DNA of 64,000 nt from Diadema antillarum. Taxonomy: Eukaryota. The translations under genes and the position numbers were made by a program. The notes beneath the pieces were generated by a model. The model saw only the letters and a list, made by a program, of their open reading frames with translations, searched no databases and was not told where the DNA came from. Each line of letters begins with the position of its first letter. The stretch's first letter is position 1. The DNA lies in assembly GCF_040938485.1 (NCBI RefSeq), contig NW_027271579.1, positions 496,001 through 560,000 of the forward strand. The letters run 5' to 3'. Below, in pieces: positions 11,078-45,050 of the stretch.

Positions 11078-11633
11078 CAAGACACAGAATGGCCGCTATC
11101 CGGACAAAGCTATCGGGTGCTGGACAGTCGACTTCCGTGAAGAAGGGCTGAATGACGTAATCGGCAAATGTGAGGGCTACTATCGCCTGACCAGTAGGAT
11201 TTATGATGATGAGTGTTACCCAGAGCAGCAGGAATGCCGGTAAACCACCGAAGCTGGCCATAATGTACGCATACTCTCCCCCACTCTTCGGGATGGTGGT
11301 CCCGAGTTCGGCAAAGCACAGAGCTCCGATCAGAGAAAACAAACCAGAAACGATCCACACGACGAGGGACATACCCACGGAGCCAGAATTTTTCAAAACG
11401 CTGGTCGGGGAGAGGAAGATTCCAGAGCCGACAATGCAGCCGATAATGACAGTGCTGCTACTAAAGAGACCGATCTGGGGTTTGAGTTGAACTCGGCTGT
11501 CGTCATGGGTGTCGACCCTCCCTTCACCTTGGTCCCCCGTCGCCTCGGCCTCCTTTCCACCGCGACTTGGGTTGAGCACGCCAGTCTCTGGAGTTTCGGC
11601 TGCATGGCCATTTTCTCCTTGGTTCAAAACCAT
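11078..11633 (-). CDS. First coding exon (copy A) of a LAT/y+LAT-type SLC7 amino acid transporter light chain: N-tail and TM1-TM3
   Basis: Motifs [34 protein letters not shown]-x-x-QAIVALTFA and the extracellular Cys (DCPAP). Ends at the phase-1 donor CTT G|GTAAGG (intron starts 11077). Possible tandem acceptor (ccag|cag) at 11671-11667 upstream of the ATG. Confidence 0.92.
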
Positions 11634-12365
11634 ATTTCGTTTGATATCTCCTCTCCTTCAGAAAATCTGCTGGCGATGAGATGACAAAACTATCAGCTGA
11701 ATGAATAAAGTCTGTAGTAATAAAACAACTACGGAATCTTCTTACACAGCACGACAATGTCAAGTTGGTCAAGAGATAACAACGTCGATATCGTCGAGAA
11801 TGATGACACTGATAATTTGATAACGGACCGCCGAGCGAAGAATTACAAAACTGCTATACTAGCGCTAGCTAGCCACGTGGATCGCGCGCGAAATAATGAA
11901 TGTCAACATCATTGCATTGTGCTGAATGAGTACTTGTAGTAGGTCGGCTTGCGCTACGGCATCAACGCAGGAGTACGGGTTCGGGCATTCAGCACGCCCA
12001 ACAAAAAAATGAAAACACGACACACACACACACACACACACCCCACACACACATGCACATACACACACAGACACACACAAAGACAATACACAAAGCGTAC
12101 CGTTATCCGGAGTCTAACAGCATGAATGGCGGGCATATCTCGCGTAGTTTCGGAGGTGTAGCCTTTGAAACCAGTCGTCGCAGATTCAAGGAAATTCGTC
12201 ACAATGGATTGAAGGTTTACAAAAAGTAGAACGAAAAGAAGTAAAGTTTTAAAACTTCTTTTCGAAGAGACTGTAAATGTTGAAATCATAACAAACTAGA
12301 GTTATTACTAGAACGTGCCTGGCTGGAAGAAAGCTATCCACCCGTACTTGCAAAGAGAATATTTT

Positions 12366-12668
12366 CAGAGACTCCAACTCTCCCGTTTTCGACGGGAGAT
12401 CTCCCGCCGAAAGCCCATTTTTGCACAATCTCCCGTTCTCCCGTTTGAGATTTGATTTCTCCCGCCCTGGCTCTGTGTCTCCCGGTGGAAAGGATTTCTT
12501 ACTTATTTCTATCGTATGTTGAAAAAATAAACCTTAGATAGCACCAGAGAACATCTAGAATCCTAGGAACTTCGCGCTTTGCACACATCAACTTGGAGTC
12601 TCCCGTTTGCTAGGGGTTTCGGGCGGGAGAATCTCCAGATCAGAAGGTGCTTGGGGTTGGAGTCTCTG
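12366..12668. mobile_element. MITE with CAGAGACTCCAAC TIRs and 6-bp TSD (copy 1)
   Basis: TIRs at 12366 and 12668, TATTTT on both flanks, internal CTCCCG/CGGGAG repeats. An inverted copy lies at 54622-54911. Confidence 0.85.
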
Positions 12669-14661
12669 TATTTTTCTCCTCCTCACGGGTTGTCACTGGG
12701 GAAAAGCTCTTGAGTACTTGTCATGTACTGTGTATGTACTCTACAATGATAAACATATTTTATACACGTCTTATACCTATGTAAAATCACATTCACAATC
12801 ATTGTTGTCTATCTAACATTCACATCACCTGCATGCATCACTTTCTAAAAGTGAAATAAGTGTGAAAGAATGACAAATATATTTCACAGCGTAATCACAA
12901 GTGAATGATATTAGTATAGCCTGTGTGAGAACAAAAATCCAATAGACCCACCATGCACTATGTCGTCTAGTTCAAATAGCAACGAGGGTTGAATGAGCAG
13001 TTTTCATTTGAATAAAATAAAATGAAAATGTCATTACACAACATGGAGTGAGAACATCAATGTCACGTGTAATCACCTATAGGAATATATAGCTGATATA
13101 CGGTTATTTTTTCTCCATTTATATCTATCTCAAACAAAGTTTTGTGCAATATACGACCATGATGTTGACTGCCGTTTCATCCCTAAAAATATTGGTGAGG
13201 ATGCACCAGTCCCTCTATCAATCTTTTATAGGAAAAGTGGGTCCACCGTCAGGATGGTGTGCATTTGGTACAGAAACATTGTTTCATCCTCATCAACCAG
13301 TAACAACAAGTTCTTGTCAAGCCGGGCGGGGTCCTTGTTCATGAATATCTAAATGTATATAGGTCTGTCACAACCTTGTGTCTATATTGGGGCTGGATAT
13401 TATTATAACACGTGGGCTGCACTTCACAAAACAAACGAAAGACCCCAGAAAAACGCTTTGCTGAAAGCGATGGCTTTTTATTCAAATGATACGTCTATAC
13501 TGGATAGTACTGTGAACCCAAAACTGGGGGGGGGGGGGGGGGGGGGGGAGGGAGTGGGCGCCTCCACACTAAAACTTCCAAAACCACTTTTTTTTTTTTT
13601 AATAGGAGGATATTCATTTTTTAATACTGTGATGAAACTGAAACACAGCCTGTTATAATGAAGTATCATGTTACGCATTAATTCCTCATAATAAAACTCA
13701 TGGGTCTATATTGCAATGTATAGTCTTGACTCCATCAGTTGAGCAAAATTTCAGTTACTTTCAAGGATCATTCTCCACATATACAATGTAAGTTCAAGGT
13801 ATATACTTCCTCATCAATGACAGCGCTATCTGATTTATAAGTACATGTACAATACCATGTACATGTACTGCACATAAAAAAAAAATCTGAAACCCTGGGA
13901 CCACTTCAATCATAATGATAAGATTGTTGTCAAATAAGTATATATGCCCTAGTAATACACTTGTAATAGTCAGGTTGTTGGCCAGGTGCTGCCATGACAA
14001 CTTCCCAGAAATTCTGTTGCGATCATTGAAAGATTTATAGTGCTCGAATCGACTCCTGCAGCGGAGTGTCCTATAGCCAGTGACTATAATGCTCAGTACT
14101 TTACTCAGTTATGAACTAAAATAAAGAGGTCTGTACTATCTAGAAAAAGAAGAAACCAGAACATCTCATTTAAAACCATGATCCGTGCCTCGAAGATCGT
14201 ATGCACTCTATCGCAGGTGTTTATCAATAACATGACATTGTTTTCACAATATAGAGAGCTTTCCTGGTTTAATCATGCATTATCAATATCATACCAAAAT
14301 CACAACAGCGAGCCCAGAACAGCGAGCGGCAGTTCGCTGTATTATCCTTTCAATATTTTGGTGCGAAACATTATTATCTCATGTGCATGTTAGATTTCTC
14401 AGAGCACTGTCTTGCTTTTATCGAGACTGGCTGGCGGTGGACAAGACCGGATCGCTGCAGAACAGCATGTTCAAAATGTTGTGACGCTTTTGACCATAGA
14501 GATATAAAAAACTAGAGGGCGGACTCCGTAAAATCCCTGTGACCGATAGAAGGAAGCATTCGCCATTTTGGTCCGGGCAAATTTCGACTAGCAACCGTAC
14601 CGATAATGTACAGCGCTAGCGGAGCATGCAGGGAGATCGACGACGGAATGCAACGGCAGTA

Positions 14662-14863
14662 TAGTTTGCAGGCACAAACCCTTGTTGGTCGTATAGGAGT
14701 CTGCATGCGCCAAGACTAATACACGCACCACTACACTGCAGCCTCTCCCAACTTGTTGGGAGAAGCTTCAACACAGGGCCTATGGGACAGTGCCAAAGTG
14801 GTGCATGTAGTAGTCTTGGCGCAGACTCCTTTACGACCAACAAGGGTTTGTGCCTGCAAACTA
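14662..14863. mobile_element. 202-bp foldback MITE with about 70-bp TIRs and 9-bp TSD (Mutator-like by TSD length)
   Basis: Arms 14662-14732 and 14797-14863 are near-perfect reverse complements. ACGGCAGTA is directly repeated at 14653-61 and 14864-72. Confidence 0.8.
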
Positions 14864-43300: not shown

Positions 43301-44085
43301 TAAAGTTCTATATGCCAATATGTTGATTATCTGCAACTTCTTATTGCTATGGGACAGGGGAGTGGTGTGAGGGGACACCTATATTTAATGTAAGCATTCT
43401 GTCAGCGAACGAACTGTTTTGCTCTTTGTACACACTGCCTTTGACAAAGATGTATTGAGTGAAAGTCGAGGACGTGCCAAATCATCAGCGAGTATCCGTT
43501 GTGACATTTGAACTCAGGTTTCCAGTGTCCAAAGACAGACACCATTCATGTCCACTGGAGCAGTCATCGTGCTACTCTGGCCCTGGGCAGCTACACCTAG
43601 CCACCTCGTGTTTGAATGGCAACACAGCATGTCTTGGCGTACATATCCCGAGCTGAATTTAAAAAAAAGCCATTTTGGTTGTCCTACACTAAAATAGGCA
43701 ATCATGCACTTTACGCCATAAAATAAATGACTACATACAACAAAACATTCTAAACATCATATTACACAGGGGTATGTCAGACATTTTATCGGATAATTTG
43801 TATGCGGGGGTCCACGACGACTCCTACACTGTACGTACCACGTGTGATAGTCTTTACAAACCATGGCGCTACTTTACTTTTTGACTCCTGCACGATCACC
43901 CAAACAAGAGGGAGTAAACACAAATGTGCAATGTTGAAAACTATCATAACTTGTTTAAATTGAAGTGACAACAGGTCTTCAGCTCTAAGCACAAACTAAA
44001 CTCAAGGAAACAAACGATTTGAAATGAGGATAATACAGCTCCCTTCGTACTCCAAGAAAATAAGATAAAACTAGAATTTGGAGTC

Positions 44086-44148
<63 letters not shown>

Positions 44149-44473
44149 AAATGTTTATAAACAATATATTCATGGATGGGTATCCGAACTTTTCCGAAAT
44201 GAATATATCGATATACCCGAAACAAAATCCTTTTGGAATTTTCATAACTTTCAACAATAACTGAATATACTCCACTTCATTCAAGAATTTTTGCAACAAG
44301 AATTTGCATGGTATACAAGATCAATGGCAATGGATTCGAAGGCATCAAATTTACATATCGAAACCCAAACTTCACGTCCAAATCAGAAACGCACCAAAAC
44401 ATTGGTTTAAAAAAACACCACAAACAAACTAAGAAATACTTAAAGGAAACGTGAATCCGATGTAAATACTCAC

Positions 44474-45050
44474 TTATACACATCACTGCCAATAGTCGTA
44501 CAAATATATCGGGAGGGCCGCAATCCGAGTCGGCGTAAAACGGTTGCACGACATAATTCGCGAATGTCAAGGCTATGATGCTTTGCCCAGTTGGATTGAT
44601 GATAAGAAGTGTCACCCAGAGAAGAATGAAAGCTGGTAAAGGTCCAAATGCAGTCAATATATAGGAGTATTCCCCACCTGATTTGACGATGGTGGTTCCC
44701 AACTCGGCAAAGCACAGTGCACCGATCAGGGAAAAAATGCCGGACACAGTCCACACGACGAGGGACATGCCCACAGAGCCAGCATTTTCCAGCACGCTTT
44801 TTGGCGAGAGGAAAATACCGGAGCCGACGATGCAGCCCGTGATGATGGTGACGCCATTGACCCAGCTGATTTCTTTCCTCAGACGAACTGGTTCATCATG
44901 GCTTCCGCCGTTCATTTGTTTGATTTTGACGTCGCTCTTTCCACCGAAATACGAGCTACCATTCATAATATCACCACTCACGTTGGGTATACACGGCTCT
45001 CGCGAAGTGTTCAGCACGGCCGCTATCTCCTCCTCCTTCGACGGCGGCAT
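44474..45050 (-). CDS. First coding exon (copy B) of a LAT/y+LAT-type SLC7 amino acid transporter light chain
   Basis: Motifs [35 protein letters not shown] and DCGPP. Phase-1 donor ATA A|GTGAGT (intron starts 44473). Strong acceptor ttctatttttctgcatgcag| puts the exon start at 45155, implying an upstream non-coding exon. Confidence 0.92.

What the first reader, a model, noticed from the sequence alone, without database searches (positions are those of the whole stretch)
11078..45050. Two conserved SLC7 first coding exons 33 kb apart with no downstream exons between them: possible UGT1A/protocadherin-style variable-first-exon transporter locus
Seen: two intact minus-strand exons, each encoding an N-tail plus TM1-TM3. 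They are about 76% identical (92/121 aa by hand over GCIVG...C), have unrelated N-terminal tails, and end at the same codon with the same phase-1 GT donor. I searched by eye for the remaining light-chain exons (NC..VQD.FT.AK, Y.GW..LN..TEE, RNLP, SCFG, REGH) and found none at 11.6-44.4 kb or 1-11 kb. Established: these transporters need about 12 TMs, and the Cys after TM3 links to the SLC3 heavy chain. Inference: both exons look maintained by selection, so either copy B's other exons are hidden in the 40262 gap, or both exons splice to one shared set of constant exons beyond position 1. The latter would give promoter- and N-tail-switched isoforms.
Basis: partly seen in the sequence, partly recalled or inferred. 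Interest (0 to 1): 0.8.

Follow-up and report, generated by a model that had tools for sequence, protein, structure and literature searches.

The report
Sea-urchin transporter gene, two alternative first exons
A sea-urchin amino-acid transporter gene has two interchangeable first exons, 33 kb apart, that join one shared set of later exons; starfish and brittle stars have three or four such exons, so the layout is very old, but nobody has measured how the resulting proteins differ.

Summary

- **The exons.** Exon 1A (11078-11633) and exon 1B (44474-45050) lie on the minus strand. Each has its own ATG, an N-tail and TM1-TM3 of an SLC7 light chain, and a phase-1 GT donor at the same codon. They match at 92/121 core residues.
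- **No other SLC7 exon** occurs anywhere in the 64 kb.
- **The N run** stands for exactly 128 letters of the public contig and hides nothing.
- **Gene models.** The window is Diadema antillarum JBFRCO010000691.1. RefSeq isoform X1 of 'Y+L amino acid transporter 2-like' starts with exactly exon 1B and isoform X2 with exactly exon 1A. The other 326 residues are identical. Exon 2 lies 1.2 kb beyond position 1.
- **Selection.** Both exons are under purifying selection (omega about 0.05-0.13).
- **Other echinoderms.** The same layout occurs in D. setosum and two Lytechinus species. Three to four first exons occur in starfish and a brittle star, and one in a crinoid and a sea cucumber. A tree places the 1A/1B split before urchins and starfish diverged.

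The isoforms are already annotated, but I found no paper describing the locus.

The parts
44474..45050 (-). Distal alternative first coding exon 1B: 577 nt, ATG at 45050, 192 codons plus 1 nt. It encodes a 60-70-residue N-tail, TM1-TM3 and the Cys of the TM3-TM4 loop. It is the first exon of RefSeq isoform X1.
   Evidence: ORF and sequence. Pfam AA_permease_2 positions 1-126. Identical to residues 1-192 of P0382 / XP_071496802.1. Omega 0.125 against D. setosum.
44472..44473 (-). GT of the exon 1B donor (TAA|GTGAGT), phase 1.
   Evidence: Sequence. The donor sits at the same position in D. setosum and in the L002 species. The L. variegatus 178-aa model ends in the same ISK read-through. Joined to exon 2 it gives ACA = Thr, as in X1.
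45091..45112 (-). Conserved non-coding block upstream of exon 1B holding a CArG-like box CCTTATAAGG (45093-45102). A TATATAAG lies next to it at 45083-45090. Candidate core promoter of isoform X1.
   Evidence: 25/28 match to the L002 species, E 1.4e-5. Alignment. The same box lies 52-83 nt upstream of the ATG in D. antillarum, L. variegatus and L002, while the whole window has only 7 CC[AT]6GG. Function is inferred, not tested.
11078..11633 (-). Proximal alternative first coding exon 1A: 556 nt, ATG at 11633, 185 codons plus 1 nt. It covers the same protein region as 1B. It is the first exon of RefSeq isoform X2.
   Evidence: ORF and sequence. Pfam. Identical to residues 1-185 of P0315 / XP_071496803.1. 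Omega 0.053 against D. setosum.
11076..11077 (-). GT of the exon 1A donor (TTG|GTAAGG), phase 1.
   Evidence: Sequence. Conserved in D. setosum and in the L001 species. Joined to exon 2 it gives GCA = Ala, as in X2.
11634..44471 (-). The part of the 45.7-kb first intron of isoform X1 that lies between the exon 1B donor and exon 1A. It holds no SLC7 coding sequence.
   Evidence: tblastn and profile scans found nothing. Same result on the public contig. Intron lengths.
40262..40389 (.). N run, standing for exactly 128 letters of the public contig.
   Evidence: The alignment offset (q+s = 48051) is identical on both sides.
1..11075 (-). First 11 kb of the 12.3-kb intron between exon 1A and shared exon 2, also part of the X1 intron. 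Exon 2 (126 nt, acceptor ttttctccag|CA) lies 1,207-1,332 nt beyond window position 1.
   Evidence: Exon map on L004: exon 2 at 49257-49382, offset 48051.
6336..10894 (+). Haplotype-specific insertion inside that intron. It carries an intact PHD-endonuclease-RT LINE ORF (7188-10727) antisense to the gene. It is not part of the transporter.
   Evidence: Pfam RVT_1, Exo_endo_phos and PHD. The stretch is absent from the second contig copy L005.

Best explanation
The window holds the 5' two-thirds of one Diadema antillarum gene for a light chain of a heteromeric amino-acid transporter (SLC7, LAT/y+LAT/xCT group; RefSeq name 'Y+L amino acid transporter 2-like'). The gene has two tandem, paralogous, mutually exclusive first coding exons.

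Shown:
- Each first exon has its own ATG, with in-frame stops 27-36 nt upstream.
- Each encodes an N-terminal cytosolic tail, TM1-TM3 and the heavy-chain-linking Cys.
- Each ends in a phase-1 donor at the same codon.
- There is one set of nine constant exons (2-10, 326 residues, TM4-TM12). It starts 12.3 kb downstream of exon 1A and 45.7 kb downstream of exon 1B.
- Public gene models join 1B to exon 2 (X1, 519 aa) and 1A to exon 2 (X2, 512 aa).

Inferred:
- Transcription starts at one of two promoters. Exon 1B has a conserved CArG/TATA-like block just upstream.
- The chosen first exon is spliced to exon 2. When 1B is used, exon 1A is removed as part of the intron, because a first exon has no functional acceptor.
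- In urchins the fixed 1A/1B differences in the membrane core are few and conservative, while the tails differ. The isoforms therefore most likely differ in where and when they are made and in tail-dependent regulation or trafficking, not in substrate.

The architecture is old. The 1B lineage is shared with starfish and brittle stars, which carry three or four variable first exons in colinear order.
For: - Exons, donors and phases.
- No other SLC7 exon in the window.
- Exact match of exon 1B to X1 and exon 1A to X2, with an identical 326-residue remainder, in D. antillarum, D. setosum, L. variegatus and L. pictus.
- Window equals JBFRCO010000691.1, and the gap equals 128 letters.
- Exact spliced reconstruction of both isoforms on two D. 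antillarum contigs, with a single constant exon set. D. setosum likewise by tblastn and profile hits.
- Strong exon-2 acceptor and junction codons ACA/GCA.
- Purifying selection. 1A versus 1B core: pN 0.165 against saturated pS 0.70. D. antillarum versus D. setosum: omega 0.125 for 1B and 0.053 for 1A.
- Each type, including its tail and donor, is found in distant urchins.
- An intronless 512-aa A-type ORF on a 4.5-kb Logan contig (P0354) shows 1A-type spliced to the constant part.
- Same pattern of 100% identical C-part and 27-69% identical N-part in Patiria, Asterias, Acanthaster and Amphiura isoforms. Genomic arrays of 3, 4 and 4 first exons sit before one constant set.
- The tree groups urchin 1B with the middle exons of asteroids and the ophiuroid, support 97/96.
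- Conserved upstream block for 1B.
Against: - The 1B-to-exon-2 junction therefore rests on RefSeq (Gnomon) models, whose supporting data I could not inspect, and on conservation.
- No RNA-derived full-length B-type sequence from an urchin turned up in the protein collections.
- RefSeq also holds 178/179-aa models in Lytechinus that are exon 1B read two codons into the intron. Some annotation runs therefore did not join it.
- No conserved promoter block was found upstream of exon 1A.
- Transcription start sites are unknown.
- A functional difference between the isoforms is untested.
Confidence: 0.88

Rival explanations
1. These are two separate tandem genes, and copy B's exons 2-10 lie in the assembly gap or were missed by eye between 11.6 and 44.4 kb.
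For: Tandem SLC7 paralogues exist elsewhere in this genome, according to an earlier unchecked note. The window does contain an N run.
Against: - The profile and tblastn scans find no TM4-TM12 exon in 1-64000.
- The N run equals 128 letters of the public contig.
- Two D. antillarum contig copies and D. setosum each show a single constant set downstream of 1A.
Confidence: 0.01
2. Exon 1B is a stranded relic of a partial duplication. It is not expressed or not spliced, and the RefSeq X1 models are prediction artefacts.
For: No reads were examined. No RNA-derived B-type full-length sequence was found. Lytechinus has 178/179-aa exon-only models.
Against: - The ORF, start codon, donor position and phase are kept in Diadema, Lytechinus and a further urchin although synonymous sites are saturated: pN 0.09 against pS 0.92.
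- Omega is 0.125 between the two Diadema species.
- The B-type lineage also persists in asteroids and an ophiuroid.
- A non-coding block is conserved just upstream.
- A three-helix fragment of a 12-TM fold has no plausible function on its own.
- The read-through tail is not conserved: 65 residues in Diadema against 2 in Lytechinus.
Confidence: 0.05
3. Exon 1B is expressed but makes a stand-alone short 3-TM protein or a regulatory transcript that ends in the intron, rather than a full transporter.
For: RefSeq 178/179-aa models XP_041457306.1 and XP_054763287.1.
Against: - The residues after the donor are not conserved in length or sequence.
- What is conserved is the splice donor itself.
- Annotation of four urchin species gives a B-type full-length isoform.
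- L. variegatus has two accessions for the same A-type protein. The short model may therefore belong to a second, less well joined copy of the locus; this is an inference.
Confidence: 0.05

Closest known systems
UGT1A locus of vertebrates (variable first exons, shared exons 2-5)
   Same: Tandem paralogous first coding exons lie upstream of one constant exon set. Each has its own start codon and ends in a donor, and each is joined to the same exon 2. The variable part encodes the N-terminal portion of the protein, including part of the substrate site. New variable exons arise by local duplication.
   Different: Urchins have only two variable exons and asterozoans three or four, against nine or more in UGT1A. 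The protein is a 12-TM APC-fold transporter subunit, not a glucuronosyltransferase. In urchins the variable exons differ mainly in the cytosolic tail. Separate promoters are inferred, not shown.
Clustered protocadherin genes (Pcdh alpha/gamma)
   Same: Variable first exons are each spliced to constant exons, with promoter choice presumed to decide which is used. A conserved sequence element lies just upstream of a variable exon (here shown only for 1B).
   Different: There is no evidence of stochastic or monoallelic choice. The array is tiny and the spacing large (33 kb). The variable exon encodes a quarter of the protein, not nearly all of it.
SLC7 light chains of heteromeric amino-acid transporters (LAT1/2, y+LAT1/2, xCT, asc-1, b0,+AT)
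   Same: The full-length isoforms align end to end with these chains at E 1e-125 to 1e-157. They keep the TM1 G-S-G motif, the Cys of the TM3-TM4 loop and the position of the exon-1 boundary.
   Different: There is no one-to-one vertebrate orthologue: xCT, LAT2 and y+LAT2 score alike. To my knowledge, which is not tested here, no vertebrate member is described with duplicated alternative first exons encoding TM1-TM3. SLC7A2 (CAT-2A/2B) swaps an internal exon instead.
Mutually exclusive internal exon pair in the echinoderm ammonium transporter (earlier scan note s1-224547)
   Same: It is in the same genome and has the same logic: duplicated exons give two versions of a transporter's helices and are conserved across echinoderm classes.
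   Different: That case is internal exon swapping by splicing. This one is choice of first exon, presumably by promoter.

Membership tests
Variable-first-exon locus (UGT1A / clustered-Pcdh type) | Two or more tandem paralogous first exons, each with its own start codon | tested here: met
   The two exons are 69% identical. Each starts at an ATG with an in-frame stop 27 or 36 nt upstream. Three or four such exons occur in Asterias, Acanthaster and Amphiura.
Variable-first-exon locus (UGT1A / clustered-Pcdh type) | All variable exons end in a 5' splice site of the same phase | tested here: met
   Both donors are phase 1 at the homologous codon. They are conserved in other species.
Variable-first-exon locus (UGT1A / clustered-Pcdh type) | A single set of constant exons downstream of the whole array | tested here: met
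   There is one set of exons 2-10 on L004, L005 and L008, and none between 1B and 1A.
Variable-first-exon locus (UGT1A / clustered-Pcdh type) | Mature transcripts join each variable exon directly to constant exon 2 | tested here: inconclusive
   RefSeq isoforms X1 and X2 show it in four urchins, four starfish and a brittle star. One intronless A-type contig also shows it.
Variable-first-exon locus (UGT1A / clustered-Pcdh type) | Each variable exon has its own promoter | tested here: inconclusive
   A conserved CArG/TATA-like block lies 52-83 nt upstream of the 1B ATG in D. antillarum, L. variegatus and the L002 species, and D. setosum matches D. antillarum across it. Nothing was found for 1A. 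No start-site data are available.
SLC7 light chain of heteromeric amino-acid transporters | APC-fold amino-acid permease domain covering 12 TM helices | tested here: met
   Each first exon matches AA_permease_2 positions 1-125. Full-length X1 aligns over residues 36-518 with LAT2 and 51-517 with xCT and LAT1 chains.
SLC7 light chain of heteromeric amino-acid transporters | Conserved Cys in the TM3-TM4 loop that disulfide-links the SLC3 heavy chain | tested here: met
   The Cys in ..EVDCPAPD.. (1A) aligns with the loop Cys of LAT2. It is invariant in all variable exons aligned. The disulfide role itself comes from established knowledge and is not tested.
SLC7 light chain of heteromeric amino-acid transporters | Association with an SLC3 heavy chain and amino-acid exchange activity | not testable with these tools
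   Needs co-expression and transport assays.

The most novel reading that the evidence does not exclude
The locus may be an ancient, colinear array of variable first exons in an APC-fold transporter that predates the split of urchins from starfish and brittle stars. In such an array, promoter choice would swap TM1-TM3, and with them part of the substrate-binding site.

In starfish and brittle stars the distal exon type carries Asn where the others have Cys next to the TM1 G-S-G motif, as LAT2 does. It also differs in the SGGEY-to-SGAEY and NPTGQ-to-VPTGN motifs. One gene could therefore yield transporters of different substrate preference, a UGT1A-like logic not described for any solute carrier as far as I could find.
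Probability: 0.3. Interest if true: 0.75.

Novelty: new member of a known kind. Interest (0 to 1): 0.6.

Why it matters
Variable-first-exon loci are a textbook way of getting many proteins from one gene, but few families are known to use it. Here the swapped module is three membrane helices of a 12-helix transporter, together with the cytosolic tail and the cysteine that binds the partner subunit.

The layout has been kept across echinoderm classes. The tree places the 1A/1B split before urchins and starfish diverged, which by my own recollection (not checked here) is more than 450 million years ago.

This gives a natural domain-swap experiment for asking what TM1-TM3 and the N-tail contribute to transport, trafficking and regulation in heteromeric amino-acid transporters.

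It also carries a practical warning. Exon-level or short-contig annotation of such genes yields 'orphan' first exons and truncated 178-aa models.

The isoforms are already in RefSeq, so the discovery value lies in recognising the pattern and its age, not in a new gene.

Tried and rejected
2. The first word search, with the 257-aa ORF of exon 1B, returned mostly exon-only ORFs on short contigs because of the length filter. It was useful only for orthologues of each exon type and for eight longer homologues.
3. The search of 50%-identity representatives gave no full-length B-type or A-type protein. Its top hit, P0121, is a fused model of two tandem genes from another organism.
4. An alignment query headed by a mosquito full-length protein was dominated by insect hits. 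It nevertheless surfaced the Diadema and Lytechinus isoforms.
5. The look-up of encoding contigs could not find the shorter Acanthaster isoforms, because only the longest product is on record. The longest isoform worked.
6. I looked for a conserved non-coding block upstream of exon 1A against the L001 species and found nothing above chance.
7. Three literature searches found no description of the locus. The sea-urchin SLC expression paper PMC12189403 mentions only SLC7A11 in pigment cells and could not be tied to this gene.
8. Hidden exons in the gap were considered and rejected. Haplotype mis-assembly as the source of the two exons was also rejected, because 69% identity with saturated synonymous sites is far too diverged.
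9. No self-joined spliced model was sent to any search tool. Full-length sequences were used only as database protein ids. Exon joining was done only inside scripts, to check that the exons reproduce those proteins.

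
Full report
**1. Observation**

The two minus-strand ORFs are real.
- Exon 1A runs from the ATG at 11633 to 11078 and is followed by GTAAGG.
- Exon 1B runs from the ATG at 45050 to 44474 and is followed by GTGAGT.
- Both donors are phase 1.
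- BLASTP gives 99/144 identities, E 2e-73.
- Both exons match positions 1-125 of Pfam AA_permease_2. Exon 1A, the one searched, matches solved chains of LAT2, LAT1, y+LAT1/2, xCT, asc-1 and b0,+AT at E 1e-39 to 1e-48, and the loop Cys aligns with that of LAT2.
- Each ATG has an in-frame stop 27 nt (1A) or 36 nt (1B) upstream.

**2. Are other SLC7 exons in the window?**

A word search with the 1B ORF returned eight near-full-length homologues. tblastn with each of them, and hmmsearch --max with their profile against all 3,355 six-frame pieces of the window, hit only the two first exons. Nothing else scored better than E about 5.

**3. The gap**

The only N run is 40262-40389. The window aligns at 100% identity to public contig JBFRCO010000691.1 (locus L004) in two blocks with the same offset on both sides of the run. 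The run therefore replaces exactly 128 letters, the flanks are continuous, and no exon set can hide there. I used coordinates only and did not print, fill or use the masked letters. For transparency, the whole-locus profile scan of L004 passed over that stretch and reported no hit.

**4. What the exons belong to**

The third word search route (an alignment query) surfaced urchin proteins, and cluster look-up named them.
- D. antillarum 'Y+L amino acid transporter 2-like' isoform X1 is XP_071496802.1 (P0382, 519 aa). Isoform X2 is XP_071496803.1 (P0315, 512 aa).
- Residues 1-192 of X1 equal exon 1B exactly, and residues 1-185 of X2 equal exon 1A exactly.
- The last 326 residues of the two isoforms are identical.
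- The same holds for the X1/X2 pairs of D. setosum, L. variegatus and L. pictus.

An exact spliced reconstruction on L004 gives these positions (last exon end confirmed):

| Exon | L004 position |
|---|---|
| 1B | 3001-3577 |
| 1A | 36418-36973 |
| 2 | 49257-49382 |
| 3 | 54515-54611 |
| 4 | 55601-55645 |
| 5 | 56507-56630 |
| 6 | 56997-57100 |
| 7 | 57652-57748 |
| 8 | 66679-66828 |
| 9 | 68241-68418 |
| 10 | 69373-69434 |

- With the offset, exon 2 lies 1,207 nt beyond window position 1.
- Its acceptor is ttttctccag|CA. The junction codon is ACA (Thr) after 1B and GCA (Ala) after 1A, as in the two proteins.
- A second contig copy (L005, JBFRCO010000413.1, 94-99.8% identical) and the D. setosum locus (L008) have the same layout with one constant set.

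**5. Are both exons maintained?**

- Between 1A and 1B, synonymous sites are saturated (pS 0.70 in the core) while pN is 0.165.
- Each exon has an orthologue in distant urchins that includes its own N-tail and the same donor. P0005/L001 is the 1A type and P0001/L002 is the 1B type, with pN 0.09-0.11 against saturated pS.
- Between the two Diadema species, exon 1B has 12 synonymous and 5 non-synonymous changes (omega 0.125). Exon 1A has 6 and 1 (omega 0.053).
- Read-through past the 1B donor is not conserved: 65 extra residues in Diadema against 2 in Lytechinus. What is conserved is the splice site, not a stand-alone product.

**6. Wider distribution**

The last word search, on the exon-1B region of X1, and cluster look-up found multi-isoform sets in other echinoderms:

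| Species | Isoforms |
|---|---|
| Patiria miniata | X1-X4 |
| Asterias rubens | X1-X3 |
| Asterias amurensis | X1-X3 |
| Acanthaster planci | X1-X4 |
| Amphiura filiformis | X1, X3 |

Within each species the C-part is 100% identical and the N-part 27-69% identical.

Genomic scans counted the first exons in front of one constant set:

| Species | Tandem first exons |
|---|---|
| A. rubens | 3 |
| A. planci | 4 |
| Amphiura filiformis | 4 |
| D. setosum | 2 |
| Anneissia (crinoid) | 1 |
| Holothuria | 1, within the gene range plus 10 kb upstream |

A maximum-likelihood tree of the 140-residue core gives three results.
- Urchin 1B groups with Amphiura's third exon and the middle exons of asteroids, support 97/96.
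- The distal asterozoan exons form a separate clade, support 98/98. They carry GNI(V/I/A)GSGIFLTP, SGAEY and (V/I)PTG(N/Q/H).
- The proximal exons of all classes, including urchin 1A, the sea cucumbers and the crinoids, sit in an unresolved basal group.

The order (distal N-type, then B-type, then proximal A-type) is colinear in Asterias, Amphiura and Diadema. The 1A/1B duplication therefore predates the split of urchins from starfish and brittle stars. Sea cucumbers either lost the B type or keep it outside the stretch examined.

**7. How it most likely works**

Shown: the architecture, the selection on both exons, and the annotated isoforms.

Inferred: two promoters, with the selected first exon spliced to exon 2 and exon 1A removed as intron when 1B is used.
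- Upstream of 1B there is a conserved non-coding block, GTGTGTTCCTTAT[A/T]AGGAA, holding a perfect CC[AT]6GG (CArG-like) box. It lies 52-83 nt before the ATG in D. antillarum, L. variegatus and the L002 species, and D. setosum is identical to D. antillarum across the block.
- The whole window has only seven such boxes.
- In Diadema a TATATAAG follows the box.
- No such block was found for 1A.

Within urchins only nine core positions are fixed differences between the A and B types. Those inside the helices are conservative (L/I, I/L, I/V), and 87 of 141 columns are invariant. The tails differ apart from a short [AG]VLN[PT]S motif. The likeliest role of the two urchin isoforms is therefore different expression and tail-dependent regulation or trafficking. 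The asterozoan N-type exon is the better candidate for an altered substrate site.

**8. Limits**

- RNA-level support is indirect. It consists of RefSeq models, whose evidence I could not inspect, and one intronless 512-aa A-type ORF on a 4.5-kb Logan contig (P0354).
- No RNA-derived urchin B-type full-length sequence was found.
- RefSeq also carries 178/179-aa exon-1B-only models in Lytechinus. L. variegatus has two accessions for the identical A-type protein, so these short models probably belong to a second, poorly joined copy of the locus; this is an inference. The L. variegatus 1B exon has no other SLC7 exon within 10 kb on either side.

**9. Comparison with what is known, and novelty**

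As architecture this is a small UGT1A/protocadherin-type locus. As protein it is a standard SLC7 light chain, roughly equidistant from xCT, LAT2 and y+LAT2. Three full-text searches found no paper describing alternative first exons in an echinoderm SLC7 gene. The isoforms themselves are already in RefSeq. I therefore rate it a new member of a known kind, of moderate interest. Earlier scan notes named the genome as Diadema antillarum, and I confirmed that independently. This locus itself had not been reported by the scan before.

Noticed in passing
window 6336-10894 (LINE ORF 7188-10727, + strand): An intact PHD-endonuclease-RT LINE lies inside the transporter's intron. It is present on this contig but absent from the second D. 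antillarum contig copy (L005). It is therefore a haplotype-specific and presumably recent insertion. A further 1.2-kb stretch (4447-5656) also has no counterpart in L005.
   Followed up: partly
window 40262-40389: The N run corresponds to exactly 128 letters that are present in the public contig, so it behaves like a mask and not like an assembly gap of unknown size. The letters were not read.
   Followed up: yes
window 45083-45112 (minus strand); L012 about 9932-9941; L002 about 899-908: A perfect CArG-like box (CCTTAT[A/T]AGG) with conserved flanks lies just upstream of exon 1B in Diadema, Lytechinus and another urchin. It hints at SRF-type control of isoform X1.
   Followed up: partly
L004 and L005 (GCA_040938485.1 contigs JBFRCO010000691.1 and JBFRCO010000413.1): The whole gene occurs twice in the D. 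antillarum assembly at 94-99.8% identity, and each copy has its own RefSeq protein accessions. These are most likely two haplotypes kept as separate contigs.
   Followed up: partly
L012 10001-10537 (L. variegatus); proteins P0384, P0386: RefSeq holds 178/179-aa 'Y+L amino acid transporter 2-like' models that are simply exon 1B read two codons into the intron. They are probably annotation artefacts of an unjoined first exon.
   Followed up: partly
L006 9998-10648; L009 9674-10684; L007 10406-11047 and 34438-35526: The distal variable exons of starfish and the brittle star form their own clade. They have Asn instead of Cys next to the TM1 G-S-G motif (as in human LAT2), SGAEY instead of SGGEY, and changes in the NPTGQ motif (VPTGN in starfish). 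This may indicate a different substrate site.
   Followed up: partly
L006 1-567 and L009 1-5493: In both starfish the array is flanked upstream by an FBXL18-like LRR gene on the opposite strand, a conserved neighbour. This was not checked in Diadema.
   Followed up: no
protein P0121 (910 aa, from the representative library): The best hit of the representative search is a fused gene model of two complete tandem SLC7 genes from an unidentified organism. It is unrelated to the finding.
   Followed up: partly
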